From the IMG/VR virus record IMGVR_UViG_3300005289_000052, positions 179,670 through 243,669 of that record: a stretch of 64,000 nt of DNA; one strand, given 5' to 3'. How positions within the stretch are numbered: the stretch's first letter is position 1; every line of letters starts with the position of its first letter. Positions 11,571-21,896 of the stretch are shown here, piece after piece. The position numbers and the translations under genes are program-made. The notes beneath the pieces are model-generated. The model saw nothing but the letters and a program-made list of their open reading frames with translations. It was not told the origin of the DNA and did no database searches.

Positions 11571-12051
11571 GAGTGTTACTCCAATCCCAAATCCGGTAAT
11601 CACCTTTACGCTCCAGAATCAAGTTATTGCCGAACTCCTTGATTTCATAGACATCCCAACTCGGTCTATCCCCAAAGAGTTTGCCGAAGATCTGATTGAT
11701 TAAGCCTTCAATCGGATCACCAACAGCATCTACGAACATAGCTTTAAATTGGGGATGTAGATATTCATCGTTTGGACACAGTCGAGCCATTGCTCCCGAA
11801 CGGTGGCCACGCTCGATGAATTCCTTAGGGAACGGTCCGAATGCACGGGTGAGTTTCTTTTCTTCTGCTTCGATGGGGTACCAGCTCAACCAAGAGCGCA
11901 GTTGCTGGAGGACCATTGCTTTGGCCAACAACATACACTTAGATCGAGTTGCAGCAGGGATCAGGTGTTGACACCCAACCTCCAAGTAGAAGTTATCAAG
12001 CCTGTACTTCAACTGTAGTGCAATAGTTTCTACCGGATACAAGAAGTTCAT
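11533..12051 (-). CDS. Hypothetical protein, tandem run
   Basis: ORF track, GAGG RBS. Confidence 0.7.
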   Translation of the reverse strand: MNFLYPVETIALQLKYRLDNFYLEVGCQHLIPAATRSKCMLLAKAMVLQQLRSWLSWYPIEAEEKKLTRAFGPFPKEFIERGHRSGAMARLCPNDEYLHPQFKAMFVDAVGDPIEGLINQIFGKLFGDRPSWDVYEIKEFGNNLILERKGDYRIWDWSNTRGLICHPWGSCH

Positions 12052-12059
12052 GCCAGCCT

Positions 12060-12419
12060 CTAACTGCTAATCAAATACAATCCCGTCGGTCGGATCTCCA
12101 CACGGAGTTCTGACTCTGGGACATGGCTATACCCGCAGGCAGTCACCAACCGGAAGAGCCTATTACGCAGTACATTGTTTCTGTCAATACGCTGCATCAC
12201 TTTCAATACGGCGAATGAGGGACGTGGTTTCTCTATGCTGAGCAAAGTACTCAACTCGATACACTCAGCAACCCATGACAGTTCAACGGCTTCCACTGCA
12301 TTGACGTAGGAGAGTTCTTCGAAATCCCCATTGTACCAAGGTTCACAAATTTCCCGGTGGATCTCCATGCGGACCAAAGGGTGTAGGTTACGGTAATCCG
12401 CAACCAGTTCAAGTGCCAT
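12060..12419 (-). CDS. Hypothetical protein, first gene after early promoter
   Basis: ORF track, AGGTG RBS. Confidence 0.7.
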   Translation of the reverse strand: MALELVADYRNLHPLVRMEIHREICEPWYNGDFEELSYVNAVEAVELSWVAECIELSTLLSIEKPRPSFAVLKVMQRIDRNNVLRNRLFRLVTACGYSHVPESELRVEIRPTGLYLISS

Positions 12420-12450
12420 AACTTTTCACCTTTCTGAAGGTTAGTCACTT

Positions 12451-12470
12451 GGATAATATAGGTCTAAAAC
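12451..12470 (-). promoter_or_regulatory. Early promoter
   Basis: GTTTTAGACCTATATTATCC. Confidence 0.65.
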
Positions 12471-12557
12471 TAATTGGGATGGCGTCTATGACGTCTTCTC
12501 TATAGGATCAGGGGTATGTGTCAATTTAAACGGTATGTCGCTCACAGCGGCTAATAG

Positions 12558-13210
12558 ACGGCATAAGAAGGGTGAACCCCCACAGCACACCCCTCGGACA
12601 AGGAATGACTGTGGGGTAACCCACCAACAACACCAGTTCGCTTAGGAGGACGAACTTGAAGCAACACCCGGATCGCTTCCCTAAACATACTCAGTCAAGG
12701 TCGGCCGCCAGAGAGCCGAGTATGTTTAAGGCTGCGGTCAAGACGCTAAATCCCACCGGGAAAGAGTGAGAGGGTCAAGACAACAACTTGAGGGATTCGC
12801 CGTCCCTCCAGACCTTTCAGTTCCTTAGCATTTGCGAGACGCTAAGCAACTTCCTTACTGCCCCTGTGTTGGAAGTCGAGGTACACAGGAGTCCCCGGCA
12901 CTACTGGCCGGAGAATTACGCACAGGCGACAAGCCGCGCTCGCAGCGGCCGCCTTATCGCGTCAAGCTGCTTTCACTCTTTGAGCCGTCTACACTTACAC
13001 GGTGACTCGGTTCTTAGCCAAGGCCATGATTTGGGGTTCTGTCCTGAAAGTAGTAACAGTTCCTACGACGCCCGGTTTTACCCGGAGAAAGCACAACCTA
13101 GGGTGAGTGGGAAAGCCGAAACCTTCCAGACAGTTAATAGTCCGACGGGGAGGGACCCTGTCCATGGTGGGGTAGATTAGCTCCCACGCAAGTCTTACGA
13201 TACACTCACT
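12558..13210 (-). ncRNA. Candidate large structured ncRNA block at the 3' end of the tRNA operon
   Basis: No credible ORF; many hairpins; long-range pairs 12761-12769/12973-12981 and 13104-13110/13204-13210; ends in stem plus TTATGCCGTC. Confidence 0.5.
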
Positions 13211-13212
13211 TG

Positions 13213-13298
13213 TGGTACCCGAAGCCGGACTCGAACCGGCACGGCCTAAGGCCAACGCATTTTAAGTGCGGTGCGTCTACCGATTCCGCCATTCGGGT
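13213..13298 (-). tRNA. tRNA-Leu(UAA)
   Basis: Cloverleaf, CT-TAA-AA loop, long variable arm, GGTTCGAGTCC, encoded CCA. Confidence 0.95.
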
Positions 13299-13397
13299 GA
13301 ATGGGTGCCTTCTTTCTATTTGTCTCTGAAAGGGTTCTTTGTTTCCGGCGCAGATCCTAACTCATTGACGAAAGAAGACATTGAAACGTTGAGAGAA

Positions 13398-13472
13398 CGA
13401 CGCTACAGGATTCGAACCTGCGGGAAATACCGGTCGCAATGCGACTGCCTTCGACCACTCAGCCAAGCGCCG
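13398..13472 (-). ncRNA. tRNA-like RNA with collapsed 3-nt anticodon loop and no CCA
   Basis: Acceptor CGGCGCT/AGCGTCG, D arm GCTGAGTGGTCGAAGGC, GTCGC-ATT-GCGAC, T arm GCAGG-TTCGAAT-CCTGT. Confidence 0.7.
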
Positions 13473-13545
13473 AACTCTCAAACTAGATTTCCCCACTAGG
13501 TTAAAGCCTAGCTGCCAAGGTCGGGATCGACCTAGTGGAGAAAGA

Positions 13546-13633
13546 TGGCGGAAGGACAGGGACTCGAACCCTGGGACCTTTTACAGTCGGCGGTTTTCAA
13601 GACCGCTGCAATACGCCGCTATGCGACCCTTCC
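13546..13633 (-). tRNA. tRNA-Ser(UGA)
   Basis: GCGGT-CTTGAAA-ACCGC, long variable arm, GCCA end. Confidence 0.95.
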
Positions 13634-13887
13634 GAAAATCAAGCCAGGGCTATTCCCTGGAGTCACTCCCACGCCTAGGCGACGCGACCGATTAGAGGAA
13701 ACCTGAGAGGACCGATCGGCACGGTTTGTCTCTCACCCTTTTGGGTATGGATGTCTAGACGTTGAGTTGTGTGAGCAACTCCCCATTCGTCCACAGGGCA
13801 GGGCCACCAGCAGGGCAGGCGCTTGGTGTTGGGCGGACCATCCCGTTTATACTCGGGTATCTAAGCGCCTGAGGCGCGATCCATAAA

Positions 13888-13975
13888 TGGCAGTAGATAA
13901 GAGATTCGAACTCTTGTGGCTGTTACACCAACACGCTTTCCAGGCGTGCCCCTTAAGCCTCTCGGGCAATCTACT
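13888..13975 (-). tRNA. tRNA-Ser(GGA)
   Basis: CACGC-CTGGAAA-GCGTG, long variable arm, GCCA end. Confidence 0.95.
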
Positions 13976-14142
13976 GTAAAAGATGTAGCAAATCAATCAT
14001 TACCCGGTGTGCGACGTGTTGTATTTAGACAGCTCGGTGTCCCTGCCAGGATTTCGGGTTGTACCTGGAATACTCTCCCGAAGGACAGTGTTATACCTTT
14101 CGGCGTTTTTAACTATAGGGACTGTTCTATCGCACCACTGAT

Positions 14143-14217
14143 TGAAACCTCTTGATGGAATCGAACCATCGTCTTCCCGCTTGGGCGGCAGGCTATCTAC
14201 CATTGAAATAAAGAGGG
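14143..14217 (-). tRNA. Atypical or pseudo tRNA-Gly(CCC)
   Basis: Cloverleaf with CCTGC-CGCCCAA-GCGGG (G33 instead of U33), good T arm, 1:72 mismatch, ends TTCA not CCA. Confidence 0.6.
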
Positions 14218-14218
14218 T

Positions 14219-14405
14219 GAGTTGTTTCCCTTTGGTCTATGTTCTCTGAGGTCGGACTCGAACCGACAATGTCTAACGCTCTAACCATTACGCTAGCACG
14301 CTTCGACGCACCCACAGACAGGCAGCCCTACTAAGGGGCCAGGGTCATCTTGCCCGAAGGCTCAACCCAGGGTATACCAATTCCCCCACTCGAGGGAAAC
14401 AACTC
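14219..14405 (-). ncRNA. Expanded tRNA-Leu(UAG)-like RNA with extra arms, enclosed by a 13-bp stem
   Basis: Leu-type D arm GGGGAATTGGTATACCC, GGCCC-CTTAGTA-GGGCT arm, T arm GTCGG-TTCGAGT-CCGAC, flanking GAGTTGTTTCCCT/AGGGAAACAACTC. Confidence 0.6.
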
Positions 14406-14585
14406 TGATCATTCTTAAGCAGTAGATTTCACCGTACCGTCGGCTGTAATGTTACTTTCTACTTGCCTAGGCTTTCGCCTTGATTCCCTGCATCCAGACT
14501 CGCGTTACTGGATACTGCTTAAGAACAACAATGACAAACAAGATTCCTTTGTAACGCGTATTGTATTGCCTAATTTTTCAAGGCG

Positions 14586-14665
14586 TGGCCAGGGGAGCCT
14601 TCGGACCCTACTCCCACATGGAACCCCTGTTGGTGGGGCTGCTTTAGAGCTTTTAGCGACTGGCC
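14586..14665 (-). pseudogene. Degenerate tRNA-Leu(CAA)-like element
   Basis: GGCCAG/CTGGCC-A acceptor, GCCCC-ACCAACA-GGGGT arm, variable hairpin; D and T loops non-canonical. Confidence 0.4.
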
Positions 14666-14694
14666 GTTTCACGTTACCGCTGTTTATCAATGTA

Positions 14695-14770
14695 TGGCAC
14701 GCATCCAAGGACTCGAACCTTGAACCTCTGGGTTTGGAGCCCAGCGCTCTGCCAGTTGAGCTAGACACGC
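14695..14770 (-). tRNA. tRNA-Trp(CCA)
   Basis: CTGGG-CTCCAAA-CCCAG, canonical D and T loops, GCCA end. Confidence 0.95.
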
Positions 14771-14879
14771 GTTGTTGCGGTCGCCCACACCACCGGTTAC
14801 TGATACCCTGAAGCGGGTTTCGGGTCATGAGTCCCCGTGCGTCAGTTAACTGCGATTTTACCAATGATGCAGGCGAACA

Positions 14880-14955
14880 TGGTAGCACCAAGTGGGTTCG
14901 AACCACCGACCTCGCCCTTATCAGGGGCGCGCTCTACCAACTGAGCTATAGCGCT
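14880..14955 (-). tRNA. tRNA-Ile(GAU)
   Basis: CGCCC-CTGATAA-GGGCG, ACCA end. Confidence 0.95.
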
Positions 14956-14962
14956 ATGAAAC

Positions 14963-15193
14963 TTAACACAGGATCGCGATACCCTCATCACAGTGACAAG
15001 GACAAGTACAAACCTCTTCGTCCTTACCATCGGGCTTTACAAGCACCCAATTGCGATGTGGTCGCGGTGTAGCGATGTCACGTTCTTCAATGCGAACGAT
15101 CTCACCAAACAGCTTTCGAAGGCGTTCAATATCGGGCGGACTATCGTAACTGGTCCTGAAAGTTGCTTGGGGGTATTTGCAACATCCAAACAT
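14963..15193 (-). CDS. Small Cys-rich protein (76 aa)
   Basis: Likely ATG at 15193 (MFGCCKY...CTCPCHC...C); follows the 60-aa gene. Confidence 0.55.
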   Translation of the reverse strand: MFGCCKYPQATFRTSYDSPPDIERLRKLFGEIVRIEERDIATPRPHRNWVLVKPDGKDEEVCTCPCHCDEGIAILC

Positions 15194-15209
15194 GACGTCA
15201 CCCTTGTGC

Positions 15210-15392
15210 TTAGGAAGCCTTGAGGACTTCGCCGATCTTGATCTCGCGATCGTCGTACACAACCCGGTGGCTGCTTTGACCATCTTGCAAGACGAACTCT
15301 TCATGAATCTCGCCAGTGACGCGATTCACGATACTCACTTTAACTTCCTTATCGGAAGAACAGTGGGCGGCAACAGTAACGGTGGTGGTCAT
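15210..15392 (-). CDS. Small beta-rich hypothetical protein (60 aa)
   Basis: GAGGAG RBS; MTTTVTVAAHC... Confidence 0.75.
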   Translation of the reverse strand: MTTTVTVAAHCSSDKEVKVSIVNRVTGEIHEEFVLQDGQSSHRVVYDDREIKIGEVLKAS

Positions 15393-15401
15393 GGTGACTC
15401 C

Positions 15402-15776
15402 TCAGGCTGAACGACGGTTGTGGTTGACGCGCTGGATTTCCAGCTCGACATACAATTCCATCGGGTACTGAGAAGGCAACTCAACCGAGACACGCGCATT
15501 GGCAGTCTCAGGATTCACGAACACCGCAAACGGTGCATTGGCGAAAGAGCCCAACACACCCTGCATGTTCACACCACGCGCAGCCTCGTTAACAATCGGG
15601 CTGTTGATGTTGCAAGCGATGTCAACACCATCGACGGTGGTAACACGCACAGCTTTCACCGATTCGATCGAGTCGGTTGCGTCGAAGTCTTCGATCTGGG
15701 TAGCCAACAGGCCAAACAGATTGACTTCACTAACCTTCAGCGGCAAGCGCAGATGGTCGACAGGATACTTGTACAT
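15402..15776 (-). CDS. Hypothetical protein; stand-alone paralog of the C-terminal domain of the DUF2829 protein
   Basis: Aligns by eye with the C-terminal ~120 residues of 15786..16418; both end NRRSx. Confidence 0.8.
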   Translation of the reverse strand: MYKYPVDHLRLPLKVSEVNLFGLLATQIEDFDATDSIESVKAVRVTTVDGVDIACNINSPIVNEAARGVNMQGVLGSFANAPFAVFVNPETANARVSVELPSQYPMELYVELEIQRVNHNRRSA

Positions 15777-15785
15777 GACAGCCCC

Positions 15786-16418
15786 TTAATCCGAGCGACG
15801 GTTGCGTTGGCCGTATTCGATACGAAGAACGGCGAACAGTTCGACACCGGCAGTCGGTGCGGCGTGAGCACAGGCTTCCCACATCTGGGTATCTACCTGA
15901 ATCGACAGAGCACGACCATTCGGCATCCGGTCGTTGAACGACTTCATGCGAGTCTCGCTCTTGTGTGCTACTGCTTCAACGACGTTGCTCTGGACGACCA
16001 GGGCATCAACCGTTTCAATGCGCACCACTTGGACTGAGAAGATCGCATCCAGCTTTTCCAACTTGGCGCCAGCGGCTTCACCCAACTCGTACAAGTTGGA
16101 GCGCACATCACCATCAAGCGGAATACGGACCTCGAACTTGTTGACGTAATCCTCAGCATCAAGGACTACCCAGTCGTCAGCCAGGATGTCAGACTGAGAG
16201 GCAACCCACGGCACAAAATCACCGTTGTGTGCTTTCAAGCCCAACCAAGGTCGCAGGTTCGGTGTAGGGTCCTTACGAACGTTGAGCCCAACGGTTCGGG
16301 CACCCACGTCATAGTGACTAGCGCCAACTAAGACGACCCACATGCCTTTACCGTTCCAACCCTCGCGTGTGGCGCGAGAGCCGTGCTTCAATCCCGTAAG
16401 GGCTTGACCGAACTCCAT
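15786..16418 (-). CDS. DUF2829 (Tad2-like anti-defence sponge) domain fused to an unknown C-terminal domain
   Basis: MEFGQAL..LK.G....R.GWNGKGMWV ... FVPWVASQSDILADDW signature; AGGAG RBS. Confidence 0.85.
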   Translation of the reverse strand: MEFGQALTGLKHGSRATREGWNGKGMWVVLVGASHYDVGARTVGLNVRKDPTPNLRPWLGLKAHNGDFVPWVASQSDILADDWVVLDAEDYVNKFEVRIPLDGDVRSNLYELGEAAGAKLEKLDAIFSVQVVRIETVDALVVQSNVVEAVAHKSETRMKSFNDRMPNGRALSIQVDTQMWEACAHAAPTAGVELFAVLRIEYGQRNRRSD

Positions 16419-16439
16419 GTGAAGCTCCTGTTGTGAAAT

Positions 16440-16513
16440 TGGGGTGAAGCCGGGAATCGAACCCTGGTCCTCTGCGCCACAAGCAGATGTTCTACCACTG
16501 AACTAGCAACACC
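16440..16513 (-). tRNA. tRNA-His(GUG)
   Basis: TCTGC-TTGTGGC-GCAGA, G-1:C73, CCA end. Confidence 0.92.
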
Positions 16514-16521
16514 ATTGAAAT

Positions 16522-16609
16522 TGGAGGTGGGTAAGAGATTCGAACTCTTGGAGCTGTTACACCCTGATCCTTAGCAAGGACCCGCAATCGGCCTCTCTGC
16601 CAACCCACC
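16522..16609 (-). tRNA. tRNA-Ser(GCU)
   Basis: GGTCC-TTGCTAA-GGATC, long variable arm, CCA end. Confidence 0.93.
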
Positions 16610-16629
16610 TTAAAACTGTACAACGAAAA

Positions 16630-16704
16630 TGGCTCCGAGACCTGGATTCGAACCAGGGACCAAACGGTTAACAGCCGTCTACTCTACCGCTGAGCTATCC
16701 CGGA
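16630..16704 (-). tRNA. tRNA-Asn(GUU)
   Basis: GACGG-CTGTTAA-CCGTT, GCCA end. Confidence 0.95.
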
Positions 16705-16811
16705 AAGGAAATTGAATGGGAAATGTGCCTCCGTCCCAAAGCGGAGGCGTAGGATATGGAGTGAACCATAACTGACGCCCGCAGCCACCCCGAAGGGCAA
16801 TCCACCACAAA

Positions 16812-16898
16812 TCAACGTAGGTTGCTTTATACCTGACTAAGCGACCAGACCATGGAGGAACTGACTAGGGGTATGATCCCTAGTTCTCCCTACGTTGA
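16812..16898 (-). ncRNA. Circularly permuted tRNA-like (YrlA-like topology) RNA candidate
   Basis: 10-bp terminal stem; T-like arm precedes an acceptor-like hairpin (with internal CCA) and a D-like arm. Confidence 0.5.
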
Positions 16899-16901
16899 AT
16901 A

Positions 16902-16977
16902 TGGCGCCTCCGAAGGGACTTGAACCCTCGGCCCCCGGCGTGACAGGCCGGTGCTCTAACCACTGAGCTACGGAAGC
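16902..16977 (-). tRNA. tRNA-Asp(GUC)
   Basis: CCGGC-CTGTCAC-GCCGG, GCCA end. Confidence 0.95.
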
Positions 16978-17171
16978 GTAAACGTCCTGAGGAAAATGGA
17001 CTCTGCGATCACCCAGACTGTGCCTGTAGGTGCATCACTTGTTGGCTCAAGGTTCGTGTAGACTACCATGGGCCAGGAACAATCTTGAGCGTGTCGACCG
17101 ACGTGGAGCACTAGAAAGCGCAACCCACTAGGAGAGAGGTACTCTCGATCCTTCTCAACAATCTCAATCAT
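16968..17171 (-). CDS. DUF1653-like small protein; stop codon lies inside tRNA-Asp
   Basis: Y..PSG..F.VLHVGRH......MVVY......G.VWV.....F pattern; GAGG RBS. Confidence 0.65.
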   Translation of the reverse strand: MIEIVEKDREYLSPSGLRFLVLHVGRHAQDCSWPMVVYTNLEPTSDAPTGTVWVIAESIFLRTFTLP

Positions 17172-17608
17172 GTTCATTCCTCGAATATGGCTCCGGCTTG
17201 CTTCCCGCCGCAAAGACGGTTCACTAACTCATGTGTAGCCAGACGACCCGCCGGAGAGGTCTTTAACTAGATGCACCAGTATCCCTGAGGTTCCGAAGAA
17301 GGCAGGTACACGATGCAACTCCACTGGACTACGAGTTTGGGTGATCCTCTCGGCAGATTCCCGCCGAGTTAATGCTGTGGGCCGCGGGGAGGGTTCGCTC
17401 AAAAGGCAACCAAAGCGGCTCTACTGCAAAGGATCGTAATCAACTTCCCTCGCACTGAGTGGATTGCTCAGCACTTATTTTCCTTGATCCCCAGGGACGG
17501 TAGGGACATCGACTCGGTGCCTGGCTACCCTTCCACAGGGCTGCTGGTAACGTTGTCTCACAAGGTAAAACCACCGTATCGCCAGCAAGGGTCGTTGCGG
17601 TGTTAAAA

Positions 17609-17684
17609 TGGCGGAGGGTAGTGGGATCGAACCACTGCATGATGGAATCAAAGTCCATTGCCTTACCAACTTGGCTAACCCTCT
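17609..17684 (-). tRNA. tRNA-Gln(UUG)
   Basis: ATGGA-CTTTGAT-TCCAT, GCCA end, 1:72 mismatch. Confidence 0.92.
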
Positions 17685-17834
17685 CTGAAATTTTTACCTC
17701 GCCGCTAAGCACGACACCTAGCGACTTATTATTACCGTGACCCCGGATCAAGGGTTGTCGATCAGGTTCGTTACGCCTGGCCCTACACGGTAAAACCCAT
17801 TGCAAAATCCCTAGGGCTATCACAATGTTAAAAG

Positions 17835-17919
17835 TGGTGGATGATCTAGGACTCGAACCTAGGGTGTATCAATGTGCCGATTTACAGTCGGTTGTCTTCG
17901 CCGCTCGACGCAATCATCC
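17835..17919 (-). tRNA. tRNA-Tyr(GUA)
   Basis: CCGA-CTGTAAA-TCGG, long variable arm, ACCA end. Confidence 0.93.
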
Positions 17920-18196
17920 AGTAAAGCTGACAGTGTTGCGCATCGAAGCGCTGCTGGTTCCCGGACCGCACCAGCTTTCCATTAACGACGGCTGACGCGT
18001 TGTCAGCTATGGCCCTCGTTAATGACTCCCCAGGAGTACACCGCCTCAAAATGGTGCCCCGTTTCCCTATTACGGGAATCTGTTCGACTGACTCCGTGAG
18101 AGGAGAGTCTAGGTTACACGGACTCAATGTCTCCACCCCGAAAGGTTCATGACACGAACTCCCATGGCCTCAGACCAGGACGTGAAACTAAGAATG

Positions 18197-18327
18197 TGGC
18201 CCCGCTACCTGGATTCGAACCAGGGACCTCCCGACGGGCACGCGTGTTCAAACGTTCTCACCGCAGCGCGGCTATTAACGTAACCGCATGTCAGACGAGT
18301 GCTCTATACCAACTGAGCTATAGCCGG
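18197..18327 (-). ncRNA. tRNA-like RNA (GAC/Val-like) with a 53-nt insertion in the anticodon loop
   Basis: Canonical TAGCTCAGTTGGTATAGAGC D arm, CCTGG-TTCGAAT-CCAGG T arm, GCCA end; insert at 18236-18288. Confidence 0.75.
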
Positions 18328-18330
18328 GAA

Positions 18331-18567
18331 TGAGAGAGACCGCTACCCCGATCTACGGACTGTGATACTCCAAGGGACTCAGGCGAAAGGGAACCGAAAG
18401 CCTGAGAACTGCGGTATGCAAGCGCAGTTTGTCTATTACCCCGGAGACGGGTCACGTGCAGTATGTTGGGTGTGTGGGGTCCGTCAAGTCTCCACGTTCC
18501 CCCTTGGTGGCGAAACCAAGAGCGTGCTGGAACTTTCCCTTCAACCTGCTTCGCGTCATTTCTCTCA
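18331..18567 (-). ncRNA. Candidate structured leader RNA of the tRNA operon
   Basis: Ends pair (TGAGAGA/TCTCTCA); several internal hairpins; no credible ORF. Confidence 0.4.
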
Positions 18568-18595
18568 TGATATCATTGAGCTATGTATTTTTTTA
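18567..18595 (-). promoter_or_regulatory. Putative middle-type promoter driving the tRNA/ncRNA operon
   Basis: AAAAAAATACAT resembles phiKZ middle motif AAanntTAC, about 20 nt upstream of the RNA block and just past a terminator. Confidence 0.4.
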
Positions 18596-18610
18596 CTGTA
18601 CTAGTCAGGG

Positions 18611-18637
18611 CAAAAAAAAGAGGGCTCCGAAGAGCCC
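18611..18637 (-). terminator. Intrinsic terminator
   Basis: GGGCTC-TTCG-GAGCCC TCTTTTTTTT. Confidence 0.8.
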
Positions 18638-18645
18638 ACTACAGA

Positions 18646-19044
18646 TTAAGGGATTTCTGGGAAACCAATGATCTTGAGGATCAGGTTTCTCTTACGACGG
18701 TACCAGCCATCTGGCATCGCAGGAATTCCACGGGCGGCAGACTCTTGTCGAATCTTCTCATCGGTCTGGAATAGCAGCGGTACTGGGAAGTAGTGCCAAG
18801 CATTCGGTTGACCATAGCGCACCAGAGCGTGAGCAGCTTTACGGCTCCACTCTTTTATAGTGACTCCGAGACGCAGGTCTTCTTTGATCTGTTCTTGTAA
18901 CTCAGGTGGGGAGGCTGGGTTCAAGAGACTGATGTAATGGGTGCTCTTCTTCTTGGATCGTCGAGCAGCATAGATGACGCCACCAAGTTCGTGGTGTACC
19001 TGATTGCCGTTAGCGTAAGTGTGGGTGTAGTATTCGCGAGCCAT
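18646..19044 (-). CDS. Hypothetical early protein (132 aa)
   Basis: ORF track; sits between early promoter and terminator. Confidence 0.75.
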   Translation of the reverse strand: MAREYYTHTYANGNQVHHELGGVIYAARRSKKKSTHYISLLNPASPPELQEQIKEDLRLGVTIKEWSRKAAHALVRYGQPNAWHYFPVPLLFQTDEKIRQESAARGIPAMPDGWYRRKRNLILKIIGFPEIP

Positions 19045-19102
19045 GGTTAGATTACCTTCTAAGGTTAATAGGTCAGAGGTTGTAACACCAACTATTCACT
19101 CG

Positions 19103-19121
19103 GGTAATATACATCTGAAAG
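19103..19121 (-). promoter_or_regulatory. Early promoter
   Basis: CTTTCAGATGTATATTACC. Confidence 0.75.
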
Positions 19122-19178
19122 TTCTTTCAATCGACCCGAATAGGATGAGTGGGTTTTCTTTTATATGGGGTGTTCTTA

Positions 19179-19796
19179 ATGAACCGGTTACATCAATTGG
19201 TGGAGGAAGGGGAACTTTCTTATACCTACAGTCCTGAGGGCATAGACCTTCTGGATGCTGCGGGTGCCGAGGTACCCACTAAGGACATCTACATCTTGCT
19301 GACCGATACCAAAACTCTTGTGAGTAAGGTTAGTCGCATGGTGACTGGTGATCCGTACAACCATGTTTCCTTAATGCTCACCGATAACTTCGACGACGGG
19401 ATTTACACGTTCAGTCTGGGTAACGGGATCAATGGCATAAAAGGCGGCTTCATGGTTGAGGACCGTGCTAACCTGAAAGGGTCACGTTACTCGATGTATC
19501 GCCTGGGCGTCACACAGGGCGTGTACGACAAGATCAAAGCTCGGGTGACCGATTATGTCAATGGTGTAGAGAAGACCTCCTACAACCACCTGGGGCTGTT
19601 TAACGCCATCTTTAAGAAGAACATCTTCAAGTCAGAAGACGACCAGACCTCCATCTGTTCTGAGTTCGTGGTTGAAGTGCTAAAGTTCTCAGGCGTAGAA
19701 CTCTTTACCAAAAGATTCTCCAGCTCTGTAAGGCCTTACGAAATGATCAAGTCCAAGCTACTCAAGTTCCACAAGCGCGGCACCATCAAACCGTAA
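19179..19796 (+). CDS. Permuted papain-like (NlpC/P60, YiiX/YaeF C92-type) amidase/peptidase
   Basis: DIYILL, YNHVSL (His) N-terminal to SICSEFV (Cys); YNHLGL. Confidence 0.8.
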   Translation: MNRLHQLVEEGELSYTYSPEGIDLLDAAGAEVPTKDIYILLTDTKTLVSKVSRMVTGDPYNHVSLMLTDNFDDGIYTFSLGNGINGIKGGFMVEDRANLKGSRYSMYRLGVTQGVYDKIKARVTDYVNGVEKTSYNHLGLFNAIFKKNIFKSEDDQTSICSEFVVEVLKFSGVELFTKRFSSSVRPYEMIKSKLLKFHKRGTIKP

Positions 19797-19799
19797 CGT

Positions 19800-19842
19800 A
19801 GACCGGCTCACTTAGGTGGGTCGGTTTATGACGGCATAAAAG
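19800..19842. terminator. Terminator with back-to-back TTTATG(A/C)CG motifs
   Basis: ACCGGCTCAC-TTAG-GTGGGTCGGT TTATGACG overlapping CGGCATAAAA. Confidence 0.65.
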
Positions 19843-19854
19843 CTAAGCTCGAGG

Positions 19855-20377
19855 GAATCTCGACCCTACTCCCGATCGCCCACACCTTAGGGAGGTGGTG
19901 TGGCACGTCAGTTTCGCTGTGGAATCCCTGCGGCTTCGCTTTTATGTTTCTTACTTTCAGATAACGACGTAAGCTCGACGAGTCTAGGTTCAAGTTAGGG
20001 GTGCTCTCGAAGTCACCCAACGTAACCAACCCAGATCTGCCTCACGGTATCGCCCCGGTATCACACTGACACCATATCCTGACGCGGCTTTATCGGCTCG
20101 TCACTTTCAATACGACCACACGTCTACTGAAAGCGCATCCCGGTACCGATAACCGGTGCAACTCCCATGTCTACATGCCTTCGCAGTAGAAAGCGCAAGG
20201 GTCCTGATTGTTGTTTGCCGGAACTCCCCTCTGTGCCTGGCCACAAACTGATAACGAGCTGACGCATCAGTCCATGAAGTACGAATACTCGTACCAAGCT
20301 AAGAGTCCCCAACCAGAACCACATCTTCAACACATTCGTCACGGCGTTGCGCGTTGACCGTCGGATTCCCGAGATTC
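19855..20377 (-). ncRNA. Candidate large (~520 nt) structured ncRNA at the end of the PhuZ operon
   Basis: 5'/3' ends pair (GAATCTCGG/TCGAGATTC, then TCCGA/TCGGG); many hairpins with minus-strand G-U pairs; no credible ORF. Confidence 0.55.
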
Positions 20378-20397
20378 AATAATCGACTGGAGGTCTC

Positions 20398-20724
20398 CTA
20401 TACCTGACACATCCCTCGAACGTGTGGTAGTCGGATCACCGGTGCGGGACTCGCCCGCGCTGTCTTCTCATCGAACGCTGGCTCACCTAAGAGCCAAAGC
20501 ATCTCATCAACCCTGTTCCTCCAAAGATCACCTTGAAGAACCAGAGGCTCAGTGAACTGGTCAGTTCTACACCACAGACCAACTTCCTCAGCCTTAACGA
20601 GATGCGGGTTCCAGGAGCGCCAACGCTGATCGCTATCTTCGATAACTTCAACATTGTGCTCCAAGAATATCTGAGCAAGCAACGAACTCAACCCGAGACA
20701 GCCCCCAACAATGAGAACTCTCAA
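20398..20724 (-). CDS. Hypothetical protein with Rossmann-like N-terminal strand-loop-helix
   Basis: MRVLIVGGCLGLSSLLA; TTG start, AAGGA RBS. Confidence 0.55.
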   Translation of the reverse strand: MRVLIVGGCLGLSSLLAQIFLEHNVEVIEDSDQRWRSWNPHLVKAEEVGLWCRTDQFTEPLVLQGDLWRNRVDEMLWLLGEPAFDEKTARASPAPVIRLPHVRGMCQV

Positions 20725-20738
20725 ATGGTCGTCCTTAC

Positions 20739-20918
20739 TTAGCCCAAACCAATCCCCGAAGGACGGTTCTCAACCAGGTCTTGGTCGGGATCGTACTTCT
20801 TTTGAGGGTAAGGTTCGGCCCAAGGCTTTCCTTGACAACAGTCACAATGGAACGGCGTAGCGGGTGGTGCAGCCAACATCACGATGGTATTGCACTTATC
20901 GCAAGCGTACTCCCGCAT
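20739..20918 (-). CDS. 59-aa zinc-ribbon protein (not in ORF track)
   Basis: AGGAG RBS, MREYACDKCNT...FHCDCCQGK...GLG*; fills the gap directly after phuZ. Confidence 0.7.
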   Translation of the reverse strand: MREYACDKCNTIVMLAAPPATPFHCDCCQGKPWAEPYPQKKYDPDQDLVENRPSGIGLG

Positions 20919-20930
20919 GACGTTCTCCTT

Positions 20931-21896
20931 TTACAGAACCAGGAAGTCCTGGGTTGCAGCGTCTTTCTCGGTCACGAGGACTTTGGCAGAGCTGCGGCCT
21001 TCACGACGTTCCACGAATTGCTCGACCGTACGGTTAAGCGTGTCGTAAGATTGGCCAAGGAACTGCGTCGAAATGACGTAGTGCAGTTCGCTGACACCCT
21101 CGACCGGCGTCTGGAAGAAACCGGCGCAGGAGTATTCCGGCACTGGGCTTTGCAGTTGCGCTTGGTCGCGATCGGCGTACAGGCTTGCGATTGCGATTGG
21201 GTCCAGGATTTCCTTGACCTTCTCGGCGTCGCTGTAGATGTCCAGCAAGGCCAGTTGTGCTTCGACCGAAGTGGACTTGTTGAAACGCAGCCAGTGCAGA
21301 ACGTCCATGGTGTCCAGCTCGGCGTTCTGGCGGGAAGCCAGGTAGCGCAGGCAGGTGATGGCGAAGTGCAGTTGACCGTCGATGGTAGAACGCGTGGTGC
21401 CCTCGCCACTGTGGCGGTAGAAGGCAACGACCGGAACCTTGATACCGTTGGAGATCGCCGACAGCGACTTCAAGGTGTTCAGGCTGTTCTGTGCAGTGAT
21501 GGTGGACTCGGCGGAACCCGCACTGACCACGACCACAGCTTTGCCACGTTCCAGGAGTTCACGAACGATCAGCGGACCGATCACCGAACCCGAACCGCCC
21601 GAGGCGGAGAACACGACGATGTTGAAATCTTCTGGTGGCTGAGCCAACAGGATTTGCTTGATGCTGTCCGAGATGACCTGGTGGTTCTCGCGACGAACCT
21701 TACCGGAACCGTCAGTGCCTTCGAGCACGAAGATGGCTTCGGCTGGGATGGTGGTGTCCAGGTTGGAACGGCTGGTGTCTACGAAAGAGACCAGTGGGGT
21801 GGCGAAACCTGCGACTTCTTTCTGGCCGAGGTAACGTTTGGCGATGTTGTTGCCCAGACCGCCTGCACCGTAAATACGAACTTTGCCTTGAGACAT
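20931..21896 (-). CDS. phuZ: PhuZ phage tubulin
   Basis: GAGGLGNN, VDTSRSN, GSGKVR, ASGGSGSV tubulin signature, ELDTMD (T7 loop), acidic/hydrophobic C-tail. Confidence 0.95.
   Translation of the reverse strand: MSQGKVRIYGAGGLGNNIAKRYLGQKEVAGFATPLVSFVDTSRSNLDTTIPAEAIFVLEGTDGSGKVRRENHQVISDSIKQILLAQPPEDFNIVVFSASGGSGSVIGPLIVRELLERGKAVVVVSAGSAESTITAQNSLNTLKSLSAISNGIKVPVVAFYRHSGEGTTRSTIDGQLHFAITCLRYLASRQNAELDTMDVLHWLRFNKSTSVEAQLALLDIYSDAEKVKEILDPIAIASLYADRDQAQLQSPVPEYSCAGFFQTPVEGVSELHYVISTQFLGQSYDTLNRTVEQFVERREGRSSAKVLVTEKDAATQDFLVL

What the first reader, a model, noticed from the sequence alone, without database searches (positions are those of the whole stretch)
12558..18595. Operon of remodelled tRNA mimics and structured RNAs interleaved with real tRNAs and an anti-defence-like cassette
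Seen: a 6-kb minus-strand unit bounded by a putative promoter (~18590) and a TTATGCCG-tailed stem (12558). It carries 11 canonical tRNAs and at least 7 tRNA-derived elements. In the best-preserved ones (13398, 14143, 14219, 18197) the D/T elbow is intact while the anticodon arm or ends are altered (inserted, collapsed, expanded); one is permuted. Most spacers are hairpin-dense. Known: many anti-phage effectors (PrrC, RloC, PARIS AriB, retron PtuAB) cut tRNA anticodon loops, and a phage nucleus protects DNA but not cytoplasmic RNA. Inference: random decay should not selectively spare elbows, so this may be an undescribed RNA-based counter-defence or translation-control system (decoys for tRNA-recognising enzymes), released by RNase P/RNase E processing of the flanking tRNAs.
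Basis: partly seen in the sequence, partly recalled or inferred. Interest (0 to 1): 0.9.

Follow-up and report, generated by a model that had tools for sequence, protein, structure and literature searches.

The report
Phage operon of non-decoding tRNA mimics
Between 11 ordinary tRNA genes, a 6-kb stretch of an uncultured nucleus-forming jumbo phage encodes about seven tRNA-shaped RNAs whose anticodon end has been replaced or destroyed, plus a dozen other folded RNAs; selection has kept them in ten related phages, so they look like an undescribed RNA toolkit whose job is still unknown.

Summary
The window is a chimallivirus-type jumbo phage with chimallin, PhuZ and multisubunit RNAP. On the minus strand, 12558-18600 carries 13 ARAGORN/Infernal tRNAs. 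Eleven are normal. Two (14144-14218, 13397-13472) are non-canonical. There is also a 131-nt tRNA-like RNA (18197-18327) whose anticodon loop is replaced by a 53-nt three-helix arm.

Ten related uncultured phage genomes each carry one copy of that RNA. In it, 18 of 38 base pairs show compensatory changes and the tRNA core is invariant, but neither the 'anticodon' nor U33 is conserved. Other tRNA-derived elements are 18062-18196, 17929-18045, 16812-16898 (permuted arm order) and 14235-14319.

Most spacers are conserved structured RNAs: alifold z is -4 to -9, against about 0 for coding controls. Rfam and 50,697 cultured phage genomes contain no counterparts.

A Tad2-like anti-Thoeris gene cassette sits exactly between two tRNAs.

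My reading is a tRNA-punctuated operon that releases tRNAs, mRNAs and stable non-decoding tRNA-bodied RNAs, which probably act as protein-binding RNAs. A role as decoys for anticodon nucleases is unlikely, because the anticodon loop is the very part that is missing. A role as decoys for enzymes that recognise the tRNA body remains open. The function is untested.

The parts
18562..18598 (-). Putative promoter block of the tRNA/ncRNA unit, just downstream of the upstream gene's terminator (18622-18637)
   Evidence: AT-rich stretch identical between the window and L002. The leader as a whole is about 87% identical in L091 and L092. Terminator called. No sigma-70 consensus match. Promoter function is inferred.
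18330..18567 (-). E1: structured leader upstream of the first tRNA-like RNA
   Evidence: Four close homologues; 77 predicted pairs, 6 compensatory against at most 3 when slid; z=-2.3. Weak support because the sequences are close.
18197..18327 (-). E2: 131-nt tRNA-like RNA. It has an 8-position acceptor stem with one mismatch, an encoded CCA, and normal D and T arms. The anticodon stem and variable loop are invariant. The anticodon loop is replaced by a 53-nt three-helix arm (insert about 18235-18287).
   Evidence: Rfam tRNA 44.9 bits with a 55-nt insertion. ARAGORN calls Val(GAC) with a 53-nt 'intron'. Seven-sequence alignment: 93.9% of cells paired against 38-46% slid, 18/38 pairs compensatory, 0/500 shuffles reach this. 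The covariance model finds one copy in each of 10 clade genomes. U33 and the 'anticodon' are not conserved.
18062..18196 (-). E3a: structured RNA homologous to the insert ('payload') of a 165-nt tRNA-like RNA (E2b) of related phages. In the window lineage the tRNA body is lost.
   Evidence: Alignment A8 with E2b of L085-L088 and L093: 24 shared pairs, 10 compensatory. Within the window group: 7 compensatory against 0 slid.
17929..18045 (-). E3b: five-way junction like a class II tRNA. It has an 8-bp closing stem, a 5-bp hairpin with an NGG triloop, an expanded arm, a variable-arm-like hairpin and a T-arm-like hairpin (loop UUCGAU, or UUCGAUC/UUCGAGC in relatives). Wherever a tRNA-Tyr is called it lies directly 5' of it.
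   Evidence: Seven genomes; z=-8.8; 14/40 pairs compensatory against at most 2 slid. Single-sequence z=-3.3.
17835..17919 (-). tRNA-Tyr(GUA), normal, CCA encoded
17685..17834 (-). E4: structured spacer between Tyr and Gln
   Evidence: Three genomes; z about -3.7 to -4.0; 4 compensatory.
17609..17684 (-). tRNA-Gln(UUG)
17178..17608 (-). E5a/E5b: conserved spacer ahead of the 69-aa ORF. Partly structured; the strand of E5a is ambiguous.
   Evidence: E5a has 7 compensatory pairs but folds better on the plus strand (z -6.8 against -3.3). E5b z=-1.7.
16968..17177 (-). 69-aa ORF (phrog_9138, unknown function). Its last codons and stop lie inside tRNA-Asp.
   Evidence: PHROG E=8.7e-29. Homologues in cultured jumbo phages. 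Overlap read from the sequence.
16902..16977 (-). tRNA-Asp(GUC)
16812..16898 (-). E6a: four-way junction with a 9-10-bp closing stem. A 5-bp/7-nt-loop hairpin comes first, then a variable middle hairpin, then a D-arm-like hairpin. This is a permuted, YrlA-like arm order.
   Evidence: Five genomes; 27 pairs but only 2 compensatory because most are invariant. YrlA arm order taken from PMC4201824.
16441..16704 (-). tRNA-Asn(GUU), tRNA-Ser(GCU) and tRNA-His(GUG), tightly packed
14963..16418 (-). Protein cassette flanked by tRNA-His (22 nt upstream, including AGGAG) and tRNA-Ile (7 nt downstream). It holds a Tad2-like N-domain protein (210 aa, 15786-16418) and ORFs of 124, 60 and 76 aa.
   Evidence: Pfam PF11195 E=7.9e-23. 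Solved Tad2 structures 8v3e and 9eib, E=1.1e-14. The other ORFs have no family. Spacing.
14695..14955 (-). tRNA-Ile(GAU), spacer E7 and tRNA-Trp(CCA)
   Evidence: E7 has only one near-identical homologue.
14532..14689 (-). E8a: structured module closed by a 10-bp stem
   Evidence: Three close genomes; z=-4.0 to -4.4 on the minus strand against -0.9 on the plus strand.
14409..14528 (-). E8b: about 104-120-nt module with a GNRA-capped hairpin, closed by a 12-14-bp stem whose outer pairs differ but stay complementary. It sits in three different contexts in three lineages.
   Evidence: 94-99% identical core. 9/36 pairs compensatory, 7 of them in the closing stem; z=-6.1.
14320..14398 (-). E9a: three conserved hairpins upstream of E9b, the middle one variable in length
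   Evidence: Alignment A6.
14235..14319 (-). E9b: tRNA-derived RNA with an acceptor-like stem containing a G.G mismatch, a long central arm capped by GUAAUG, and a canonical T arm (14251-14267). No D arm and no CCA.
   Evidence: ARAGORN relaxed call 14241-14318. T-arm scan. MFE fold. Six genomes with compensatory changes in the central arm.
14144..14218 (-). E10: tRNA-shaped RNA called Gly(CCC) here and Val(CAC) or Val(AAC) in relatives. Position 33 is a purine in every member. No encoded CCA.
   Evidence: Rfam 41 bits. Alignment A9. CCA check.
13995..14143 (-). E11: multi-helix module with highly conserved loops, always 5' of a tRNA-Ser
   Evidence: Eight genomes; z=-5.4; 9/35 compensatory against at most 1 slid.
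13546..13975 (-). tRNA-Ser(GGA), structured spacer E12 (13634-13887) and tRNA-Ser(UGA)
   Evidence: E12 has 16/51 compensatory pairs against at most 3 slid.
13397..13472 (-). E13: anticodon-less tRNA-like RNA, called Ala(UGC) by ARAGORN and Ile(AAU) in L091. It has a Ser-type D arm, a 5-bp stem with a triloop (13433-13445) in place of the anticodon arm, a normal T arm, and no CCA.
   Evidence: Rfam 36.5 bits. The homologue in L117 keeps the triloop hairpin, acceptor and T stem through compensatory changes..
13213..13396 (-). Spacer E14 and tRNA-Leu(UAA)
12558..13209 (-). E15a-c: about 650-nt 3' structured region. Domain 1 (13103-13209) is a four-way junction with a 7-bp closing stem. Domain 2 is 12963-13100. 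Further hairpins follow, including a 30-bp stem (12663-12747) and the terminal stem 12578-12616.
   Evidence: E15a: 8 genomes, z=-8.7, 22/74 compensatory against at most 4 slid. E15b z=-4.5; E15c z=-4.3. No Rfam match.

Best explanation
The region is a tRNA-punctuated polycistronic operon of a nucleus-forming jumbo phage. It is probably transcribed from a phage promoter near 18590. The host's tRNA-maturation enzymes would cut it: RNase P at 5' ends, and RNase E, RNase Z or exonucleases at 3' ends. RNase III may also cut the long closing stems.

The operon would yield three kinds of product:
1. Eleven ordinary tRNAs.
2. Short mRNAs, namely the Tad2-like cassette and the 69-aa ORF.
3. Stable RNAs that do not decode.

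Several of the non-decoding RNAs keep a tRNA body (acceptor/T minihelix plus D/T elbow). This body would serve as a handle for processing, for stability, and for proteins that recognise the tRNA body. The anticodon end is abolished in different ways: a triloop, an extended arm, or a 53-nt three-helix insert. Where there is a conserved insert, that insert is the functional 'payload'. The remaining spacers are independent multi-helix modules.

The most likely molecular activity of these RNAs is binding or sequestering a host or phage protein, as a sponge or scaffold, and not translation.

Shown: the structures, their conservation and their covariation. Inferred: transcription as one unit, processing, stability and protein binding.
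For: Structure and selection:
- E2 has 18/38 compensatory pairs. It is 93.9% paired against 38-46% slid, and 0/500 shuffles reach this.
- The tRNA core nucleotides that match the standard tertiary positions (my mapping to U8, A14, G15, G18, G19, G53, U54, U55, C56, A58 and C48) are invariant in 9 sequences. The acceptor and T stems covary freely, and the 'anticodon' and U33 vary.
- Each of 10 genomes has one copy.

Several independent ways of removing the anticodon loop occur in the clade:
- a 53-56-nt insert (E2);
- an insert of about 90 nt with two branches (E2b);
- long hairpins of 106 and 109 nt;
- a 9-bp stem capped by UUCG (L117);
- a triloop hairpin (E13, covarying).

Evidence for a payload: E3a keeps the E2b insert, with 10/24 compensatory pairs, although the tRNA body is lost.

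Spacer modules: z is -4 to -9, there are many compensatory pairs, and slid and coding controls are near zero. Most fold better on the tRNA strand.

Anatomy fitting punctuation:
- All 11 tRNAs and E2 encode CCA.
- The cassette lies 22 nt after tRNA-His and 7 nt before tRNA-Ile.
- E3a starts immediately after E2's CCA.

Spacers are 75-93% identical between lineages whose neighbouring coding DNA is about 70-73% identical.

Precedents:
- YrlA's tRNA-like domain is cut by RNase P and receives CCA (PMC4201824).
- Engineered tRNA scaffolds stabilise RNAs inserted at the anticodon arm (PMC3753655 and PMC3401473 listed; the mechanism is from my own knowledge).
Against: - There are no expression, processing or binding data. 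The phage is uncultured and its host is unknown.
- The acceptor stems of E2, E2b and E9b carry a conserved mismatch and an eighth pair, so RNase P cleavage is not guaranteed.
- E10 and E13 lack an encoded CCA.
- Elements with trivial replacements (triloop, UUCG cap) carry no payload. For them only the tRNA body can matter, which is closer to a decoy model than to a scaffold model.
- Several modules are known only from 3-4 close genomes, so their covariation counts are small.
- The z-scores come from my own column-shuffle implementation, and related sequences inflate such measures.
- E5a folds better on the opposite strand.
- No partner protein is identified. A test for CsrA-type GGA loop motifs was negative.
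Confidence: 0.5

Rival explanations
1. The remodelled tRNAs are decoys that soak up anticodon-loop nucleases (PrrC, RloC, PARIS AriB, retron PtuAB) and so protect real tRNAs.
For: A Tad2-like anti-defence gene sits inside the cluster in the window and in relatives. The island is hypervariable, like other counter-defence islands. The normal tRNAs include Tyr, Asn, Asp and His, which are known nuclease targets (own knowledge; tRNA list).
Against: These nucleases recognise the anticodon stem-loop. In E2, E13, E9b and E3b, and in the relatives' variants, that loop is replaced, capped or absent, and its sequence is not conserved. A decoy would be expected to preserve the recognised loop.
Confidence: 0.08
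2. The mimics are decoys or competitors for proteins that read the tRNA body or 3' end and not the anticodon. Candidates are RNase P or RNase Z, the CCA-adding enzyme, tRNA-modifying enzymes, and toxins that act on the acceptor end (MenT/AbiEii-type nucleotidyltransferases, tRNA acetyltransferases, acceptor-stem RNases).
For: What is invariably kept is the acceptor/T minihelix and, in E2, E2b and E10, the complete elbow. The anticodon end is dispensable and is removed in at least five different ways. Variants with only a triloop or a UUCG cap have no payload. E2 and E2b encode CCA.
Against: E3a lost the tRNA body but kept the insert. E10, E13 and E9b have no encoded CCA. Acceptor stems vary freely in sequence, so any target must read shape only. 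No candidate target is identified.
Confidence: 0.2
3. Some of the odd elements are working tRNAs. E10 would be a tRNA-Val whose altered anticodon loop (purine 33) evades a host nuclease. E2 would be a tRNA-Val(GAC) precursor whose insert is an intron removed by an unknown enzyme.
For: E10 homologues keep a 7-nt loop ending in CA and mostly the CAC anticodon, with covarying stems. In the window, E2 retains the loop sequence CUGACAU, which is typical of tRNA-Val(GAC) (the comparison with bacterial tRNA-Val is from memory). The cluster has no normal tRNA-Val. Phage tRNAs with anticodon-loop changes that evade nucleases are known (own knowledge).
Against: U33 is replaced by A or G in all E10 members, and the anticodon differs among them (CAC, AAC, CCC). 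In E2 both U33 and the 'anticodon' change among orthologues. The insert is far too small for a group I intron, has no Rfam intron match, and has no bulge-helix-bulge motif: its two unpaired strands face each other. In E2 the discriminator position is G, paired with an extra 5' C, and not the A that ValRS uses (identity rule from own knowledge). E10 lacks CCA, while every normal tRNA here encodes it.
Confidence: 0.1
4. The elements have only cis roles. They would be processing punctuation, insulators or stabilisers for the neighbouring tRNAs and mRNAs, or slowly decaying tRNA duplicates, and would have no function of their own in trans.
For: The tRNA-cluster layout is tight and the mRNAs are flanked by tRNAs. 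The tRNA content of the cluster turns over rapidly among relatives, and an HNH endonuclease is present in one relative. Some elements occur only in the closest relatives (E13, E7).
Against: Loops and junctions are conserved in sequence, in places above neighbouring coding DNA. Examples are the E11 loops, E8b at 94-99% and E3b at 82-96%. Punctuation alone does not require this. Elements move as intact units between contexts (E2, E8b). Decay is excluded for the widely shared elements by compensatory changes.
Confidence: 0.15

Closest known systems
Bacteriophage T4 RNAC and RNAD (small stable RNAs of the T4 tRNA region)
   Same: They are small non-tRNA RNAs encoded within and co-transcribed with a phage tRNA gene cluster, and their function is still unknown (PMC3014915).
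   Different: There is no sequence similarity: blastn of the whole region against 50,697 phage genomes, which include T4-type phages, matched only tRNAs. Here there are many more elements, several with a clear tRNA body and a replaced anticodon end, in a chimallivirus and not a T4-like phage.
YrlA / bacterial Y RNAs (tRNA-like domain plus Ro60-binding stem), also found in some phages
   Same: Both are non-decoding RNAs that mimic the tRNA D arm, T arm and acceptor stem. M. smegmatis YrlA is cut by RNase P and receives CCA (PMC4201824). E6a has the same permuted arm order: T position, middle stem, D-like arm.
   Different: E2, E2b, E10 and E13 have normal (non-permuted) topology, with their ends at the acceptor stem. 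There is no GNCGAA motif, no Rfam match and no TROVE/Ro60 gene in the region. The E6a T-position loop is not a canonical T loop.
tmRNA
   Same: It is a tRNA-like acceptor/T domain fused to a large non-tRNA RNA.
   Different: ARAGORN finds no tmRNA. There is no tag reading frame and no pseudoknot ring. The insert replaces the anticodon loop of a complete cloverleaf.
Engineered 'tRNA scaffold' for recombinant RNA (RNA of interest inserted at the anticodon arm)
   Same: The architecture is the same as E2 and E2b: an intact tRNA body with a foreign structured RNA in place of the anticodon loop. In E. coli the chimera is processed and protected like a tRNA (papers PMC3753655 and PMC3401473 listed; details from own knowledge).
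   Different: That is a laboratory design. Here the arrangement is natural, conserved and under selection in a phage clade.
Phage tRNAs with anticodon-loop changes that escape host anticodon nucleases (own knowledge, not retrieved here)
   Same: They are phage-encoded tRNA variants altered in the anticodon loop. E10, with a purine at position 33, could be of this kind.
   Different: Those tRNAs still decode. E2, E13, E9b and E3b have no usable anticodon loop.
GOLLD / ROOL large ornate RNAs found next to tRNAs in phages and prophages (own knowledge; the Rfam families were searched)
   Same: They are large conserved structured RNAs of unknown function lying beside tRNA genes in phage genomes. 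The 650-nt E15 region is the nearest analogue here.
   Different: There is no match to either Rfam model, even at E<=5. The sizes and architectures differ.

Membership tests
Canonical elongator tRNA (Rfam RF00005), tested for E2 (18197-18327) | Cloverleaf with acceptor, D, anticodon and T arms, and conserved core nucleotides | tested here: met
   44.9 bits against a gathering score of 29. Core nucleotides are invariant in 9 homologues.
Canonical elongator tRNA, tested for E2 | 7-nt anticodon loop with U33, and an anticodon conserved among orthologues | tested here: not met
   The loop is replaced by a 53-56-nt structured arm. Position 33 is U, A, G or C, and the 'anticodon' differs among the 9-10 orthologues.
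Canonical elongator tRNA, tested for E10 (14144-14218) | U33, a conserved anticodon, and a 3' end like the other tRNAs of the genome | tested here: not met
   Position 33 is a purine in all 6 E10-family members (the seventh row of the alignment is a separate paralogue with U33). Anticodons are CCC, AAC and CAC. There is no encoded CCA, although all 11 normal tRNAs have it.
Canonical elongator tRNA, tested for E13 (13397-13472) | Anticodon arm with a 5-bp stem and a 7-nt loop | tested here: not met
   The covarying structure is a 5-bp stem with a 3-nt loop. ARAGORN assigns different anticodons to copies that are 98.7% identical.
tRNA gene with a group I intron | A self-splicing intron of roughly 200 nt or more with a P1-P9 core, inserted in the anticodon loop | tested here: not met
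   The insert is 53-56 nt (E2) or about 90 nt (E2b). No Intron_gpI hit or any other Rfam hit at E<=5.
tRNA gene with an archaeal/eukaryal protein-spliced intron | Bulge-helix-bulge motif at the exon-intron junctions | tested here: not met
   The consensus structure has an internal loop with the two unpaired strands directly opposite each other, and not two 3-nt bulges separated by 4 bp.
tmRNA | tRNA-like domain plus a tag-peptide reading frame | tested here: not met
   ARAGORN tmRNA search of the window found none.
YrlA / Y RNA | Permuted tRNA-like domain (T, acceptor-like and D arms) closed by a stem | tested here: inconclusive
   E6a has this order and a D-arm-like hairpin. However, its T-position loop is non-canonical and only 2 of 27 pairs covary.
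YrlA / Y RNA | GNCGAA(N)G Ro-binding motif and a Ro60/TROVE gene within about 4 kb | tested here: not met
   The motif is absent from E6a. The ORFs of the region have no TROVE match. The rest of the 243-kb genome outside the window was not examined.
Known self-cleaving ribozymes, riboswitches, GOLLD, ROOL and other Rfam families (for the spacers) | Match to the family covariance model | tested here: not met
   Permissive cmscan of 12000-19200 at E<=5 returned only tRNA hits and chance-level hits.
Tad2 (Thoeris anti-defence 2, PF11195), tested for the 210-aa ORF 15786-16418 | Tad2-like domain | tested here: met
   Pfam 81.2 bits against a cut-off of 25, E=7.9e-23, residues 1-85. Solved Tad2 structures at E=1.1e-14.
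Tad2 | Binding and sequestration of the Thoeris signalling nucleotide | not testable with these tools
   This needs biochemistry. The protein also carries an extra C-terminal domain of about 125 aa with no family match.
Chimalliviridae-type nucleus-forming jumbo phage (context) | Chimallin shell protein, PhuZ tubulin and multisubunit RNAP genes | tested here: met
   PHROG hits: nuclear shell protein E=3e-116, PhuZ E=2e-90, and RNAP beta-subunit families.

The most novel reading that the evidence does not exclude
A clade of nucleus-forming jumbo phages makes a family of non-decoding tRNA mimics: an intact tRNA body with the anticodon end deleted, capped or replaced by a structured insert. These would act as an RNA-based counter-defence. 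They would be matured like tRNAs in the cytoplasm, and would then sequester or misdirect host immune effectors or housekeeping enzymes that recognise the tRNA body or CCA end. The inserts would add further protein-binding specificities. This would be the first natural use of the 'tRNA scaffold' principle by a virus of bacteria.
Probability: 0.2. Interest if true: 0.9.

Novelty: new variant of a known kind. Interest (0 to 1): 0.75.

Why it matters
Phage tRNA clusters are usually read as codon-usage helpers or as spare parts against tRNA-cutting defences. Here a clade of jumbo phages devotes more of its tRNA island to conserved RNAs that cannot decode than to tRNAs themselves.

If these RNAs accumulate, they define several new RNA families:
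- the 131-nt E2 and the 165-nt E2b tRNA chimeras;
- anticodon-less tRNA bodies;
- modules of about 100-650 nt such as E3b, E8b, E11 and E15.

They would also be a natural counterpart of the engineered tRNA scaffold.

They would open a testable question: what, in a bacterial cell, is worth binding with a tRNA body that has no anticodon? The answer bears on RNA-level counter-defence, which matters especially for phages whose DNA is shielded by a nucleus while their RNAs are exposed. It also bears on tRNA-processing capacity during infection, and on the old puzzle of the T4 RNAC and RNAD species.

Tried and rejected
- Rfam at gathering and at permissive thresholds gave nothing but tRNA hits.
- Megablast and blastn of the whole region against 50,697 phage genomes matched only tRNAs.
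- An exact-pattern scan of IMG/VR for the E8b core found only the window's contig and one relative.
- An E2 signature pattern in IMG/VR matched only this clade. In 185,579 representative prokaryotic genomes it gave a single match inside an ORF-like stretch of a Desulfosporosinus MAG, with no tRNA features. I rejected that match as chance.
- The E2 covariance model found nothing in loci of more distant chimalliviruses.
- The nearest cultured relative by PhuZ, Xanthomonas phage LucasX (44% aa), has protein genes and no tRNA island downstream of PhuZ.
- Pseudomonas phage D6 has a compact tRNA cluster with short spacers and one 'tRNA-OTHER'. I did not pursue it.
- ARAGORN's 'tRNA-Val with 61-nt intron' at 14243-14395, and its many calls at 70% threshold, were rejected as artefacts.
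- Small ORFs inside spacers, such as 12551-12688, were rejected because they overlap strong covarying hairpins and lack a ribosome-binding site.
- The idea of a CsrA/RsmA-type sponge was rejected: GGA is not enriched in unpaired regions (11 of 55 occurrences).
- A repeated phage promoter motif could not be defined; the motif upstream of the next gene occurs only once in the window.
- Literature searches found no description of phage tRNA-like RNAs with replaced anticodon arms.
- Simple pseudogene decay was rejected for the shared elements because of compensatory changes. It cannot be excluded for E7 and E6b, which have only near-identical homologues.

Full report
**Context.** The window is part of IMG/VR contig 3300005289_000052 (243.7 kb). 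PHROG matches show a nucleus-forming (chimallivirus-type) jumbo phage: a nuclear-shell protein (2320-4353), PhuZ tubulin (20934-21896), several multisubunit-RNAP subunits, terminase and tail sheath. Its nearest cultured relatives are only 40-44% identical in a virion protein and in PhuZ; they are Xanthomonas phages Xoo-sp14, LucasX and RTH11.

**Checking the observation.**
- ARAGORN tRNAs on the minus strand between 13213 and 17919. Infernal recovers all 13 (11 of them at default filters), plus a further tRNA hit at 18200-18327 that contains a 55-nt insertion in the anticodon loop.
They have the lowest scores.
- The upstream gene (18649-19044) ends in a strong intrinsic terminator at 18637-18622.
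- An AT-rich block follows at about 18562-18598, identical between the window and L002. This is consistent with a promoter but is not proof of one.
- At the 3' end, the stem 12616-12578 exists, but the scan does not call it a terminator.

**Relatives.** Using the Tad2-like protein and PhuZ as anchors, I retrieved the orthologous region from nine other distinct uncultured phage genomes and one short fragment:
- L002/L084, L085-L088 and L117 from IMG/VR;
- L091, L092, L093 and L107 from metagenomes.

All carry a tRNA island downstream of PhuZ, but its tRNA content and order vary widely. Between the window and the more distant lineages, coding DNA next to the island is about 70-73% identical. Many spacers are 75-93% identical.

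**The 131-nt tRNA-like RNA (E2, 18197-18327).**
- ARAGORN with introns allowed reads it as tRNA-Val(GAC) with a 53-nt intron.
- Homologues from seven, then nine, genomes align well.
- RNAalifold predicts 38 pairs, of which 18 show compensatory changes.
- On the explicit count, 93.9% of cells pair, against 38-46% when partners are slid. None of 500 shuffles reaches the observed covariation.
- The acceptor and T stems covary freely.
- The D arm, T loop, variable loop, anticodon stem (CUCGU/CGGG) and the other core nucleotides are invariant.
- The anticodon loop is replaced by three stacked helices with a conserved 4x3 internal loop (NNUA/GAK).
- Neither U33 nor any 'anticodon' is conserved.
- The acceptor stem has eight positions with one conserved mismatch, and in the window lineage it is followed directly by CCA.
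- A covariance model built from nine sequences finds exactly one full-length copy (100-145 bits) in each of ten genomes. It sits either at the head of the island or after tRNA-Ser(UGA). The model finds none in loci of more distant chimalliviruses.
- A signature pattern found it nowhere else in IMG/VR, and only as a chance match in 185,579 prokaryotic genomes.
- The insert is too small for a group I intron and has no bulge-helix-bulge motif.

E2 is therefore a conserved, non-decoding tRNA mimic.

**More mimics in the clade.** The same model picked up further insert-bearing tRNA-like RNAs in relatives:
- a 165-nt family (E2b) with a two-branched insert of about 90 nt;
- RNAs of 106 and 109 nt with a long hairpin in place of the anticodon arm;
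- an 89-nt RNA whose 'anticodon arm' is a 9-bp stem capped by UUCG.

The window's spacer E3a (18062-18196) is homologous to the E2b insert, with 24 shared pairs of which 10 are compensatory. It has lost the D arm, the T arm and the 5' acceptor strand. In this lineage the insert is what selection kept, not the elbow.

**The other tRNA-derived elements of the window.**
- E13 (13397-13472). ARAGORN called it Ala(UGC), and called a 98.7%-identical copy Ile(AAU). It has a homologue in L117 in which the central 5-bp stem with a triloop, the acceptor stem and the T stem are all kept through compensatory changes. It is an anticodon-less RNA with a Ser-type D arm.
- E10 (14144-14218). It belongs to a family called Val(CAC), Val(AAC) or Gly(CCC) in different genomes. 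Every member has a purine at position 33 and lacks CCA, whereas all 11 normal tRNAs and E2 encode CCA.
- E9b (14235-14319). It has an acceptor-like stem, a long covarying central arm and a canonical T arm.
- E3b (17929-18045). It lies directly 5' of tRNA-Tyr wherever a Tyr gene is called. It is a five-way junction resembling a class II tRNA, with an NGG triloop hairpin and a T-like hairpin. Across seven genomes z=-8.8, and 14 of 40 pairs are compensatory.
- E6a (16812-16898). It is a four-way junction whose arm order (T position, middle stem, D-like arm) matches the permuted order described for YrlA. Its pairs hardly vary, so the evidence is weaker.

That makes about seven tRNA-derived elements, as claimed. 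A scan for T-arm motifs found no others.

**The remaining spacers.** For each spacer I collected homologues, aligned them, ran RNAalifold and compared the result with column-shuffled alignments, slid partners, the opposite strand and coding or promoter controls.

| Element | z | Compensatory pairs |
|---|---|---|
| E15a | -8.7 | 22 of 74 |
| E8b | -6.1 | 9 of 36 |
| E11 | -5.4 | 9 of 35 |
| E12 | not quoted | 16 of 51 |
| E15b | -4.5 | not quoted |
| E15c | -4.3 | not quoted |
| E8a | -4.0 | not quoted |

- Slid controls give 0-4 compensatory pairs.
- The PhuZ and 132-aa coding controls give z of -1.35 to +1.14.
- The promoter region of the next gene gives z=-0.9 and no compensatory pair.
- Most elements fold better on the tRNA strand. 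E5a does not.
- The modules are closed by long stems and carry UUCG and GNRA tetraloops.
- E8b is 94-99% identical across three lineages yet lies in three different contexts. The outer part of its closing stem differs in sequence but stays complementary.
- None matches Rfam or any cultured phage.

**Protein genes in the island.**
- The 210-aa ORF (15786-16418) has an N-terminal Tad2-like domain (Pfam E=8e-23; solved Tad2 structures E=1e-14).
- It is followed by ORFs of 124, 60 and 76 aa with no family match.
- The cassette begins 22 nt after tRNA-His, with an AGGAG, and ends 7 nt before tRNA-Ile.
- A 69-aa ORF (phrog_9138) ends inside tRNA-Asp.
- The five relatives whose island ORFs were scanned also carry Tad2-like genes (L085, L086), an HNH endonuclease (L084), SNase-like nucleases (L086-L088), a Kelch protein (L086) and an alginate lyase (L088). 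The island is therefore a hypervariable accessory region.

**Interpretation.** The anatomy fits a tRNA-punctuated polycistronic unit that is processed by tRNA-maturation enzymes into tRNAs, mRNAs and stable non-decoding RNAs. This is an inference; there are no expression data.

For the mimics, two things are under selection:
- the tRNA body, in nearly all of them;
- the insert, in E2, E2b and E3a.

[quoted passage not shown] RNAs that carry only a triloop or a UUCG cap suggest that the body itself is also a ligand.

I therefore favour protein-binding RNAs (sponges or scaffolds), at about 0.5 confidence.

A decoy role towards enzymes or toxins that read the tRNA body or CCA end remains open, at about 0.2. 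E10 could be a nuclease-evading tRNA-Val. Neutral decay is excluded for the shared elements.

**Novelty.** The closest known cases are:
- T4 RNAC and RNAD, which have the same genomic setting and an unknown function (PMC3014915);
- YrlA;
- tmRNA;
- the laboratory tRNA scaffold.

None is homologous, and none has this combination of features. I rate the finding a new variant of a known kind, namely tRNA mimics and small RNAs of phage tRNA clusters. It comprises several new RNA families that so far are restricted to one uncultured phage clade.

Noticed in passing
window 19800-20760 (minus strand), between the PhuZ gene and the 132-aa gene: This is a second non-coding region of about 1 kb with conserved RNA structure, outside the finding. 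For 20150-20399, z=-5.7 on the minus strand (11 sequences, 12 compensatory pairs) against -0.14 on the plus strand. For 20200-20379, z=-8.0. There is no convincing minus-strand ORF and no Rfam match.
   Followed up: partly
window 16968-16977: The last codons and the stop codon of the 69-aa ORF (phrog_9138) lie inside the 5' acceptor strand of tRNA-Asp. In at least L085 and L107 an ATG-initiated 69-aa ORF at the equivalent position likewise runs about 10 nt into tRNA-Asp (homology not separately checked). RNase P maturation of tRNA-Asp would then remove the stop codon from the mRNA.
   Followed up: partly
window 14409-14528; L084 16759-16862; L093 15057-15161: The 104-nt core of E8b is 94-99% identical in three lineages but sits between different neighbours in each. 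The outer 5-6 bp of its closing stem differ in sequence yet remain complementary. It behaves like a mobile or shuffled RNA cassette.
   Followed up: partly
window 17438-17608 (E5a); plus-strand terminator-like site 17455-17471: This spacer folds better on the plus strand (z -6.8 against -3.3) and contains a plus-strand terminator-like hairpin. An antisense transcript or a bidirectional element is possible.
   Followed up: no
L084 14819-15328; L086 16785-17690 and 18617-19093; L087 17997-18476; L088 17882-18577 and 19515-19964: The tRNA islands of relatives carry different accessory genes: an HNH endonuclease, a Kelch-repeat protein, SNase-like nucleases and an alginate lyase. L085 and L086 also carry a Tad2-like gene; the long ORFs at the same position in L087, L088 and L107 were not scanned.
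   Followed up: partly
window 19149-19796 (plus strand): A 215-aa GTG-initiated ORF lies on the strand opposite to all neighbouring genes, in a region conserved at coding-like levels and without RNA-structure signal. I did not determine whether it is a real gene.
   Followed up: no
window 12442-12475 and relatives' loci near position 12790 (equivalent to about window 19100): A 34-nt AT-rich motif containing TATATTAT lies upstream of the gene that follows the island. A similar copy occurs upstream of the 132-aa gene region in several relatives. It may be a phage promoter motif, but it occurs only once in this window.
   Followed up: partly
window 14963-15193: The 76-aa ORF is cysteine-rich (CC near the N-terminus, CxCxCxC near the C-terminus), matches no family, and is absent from L002.
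   Followed up: no
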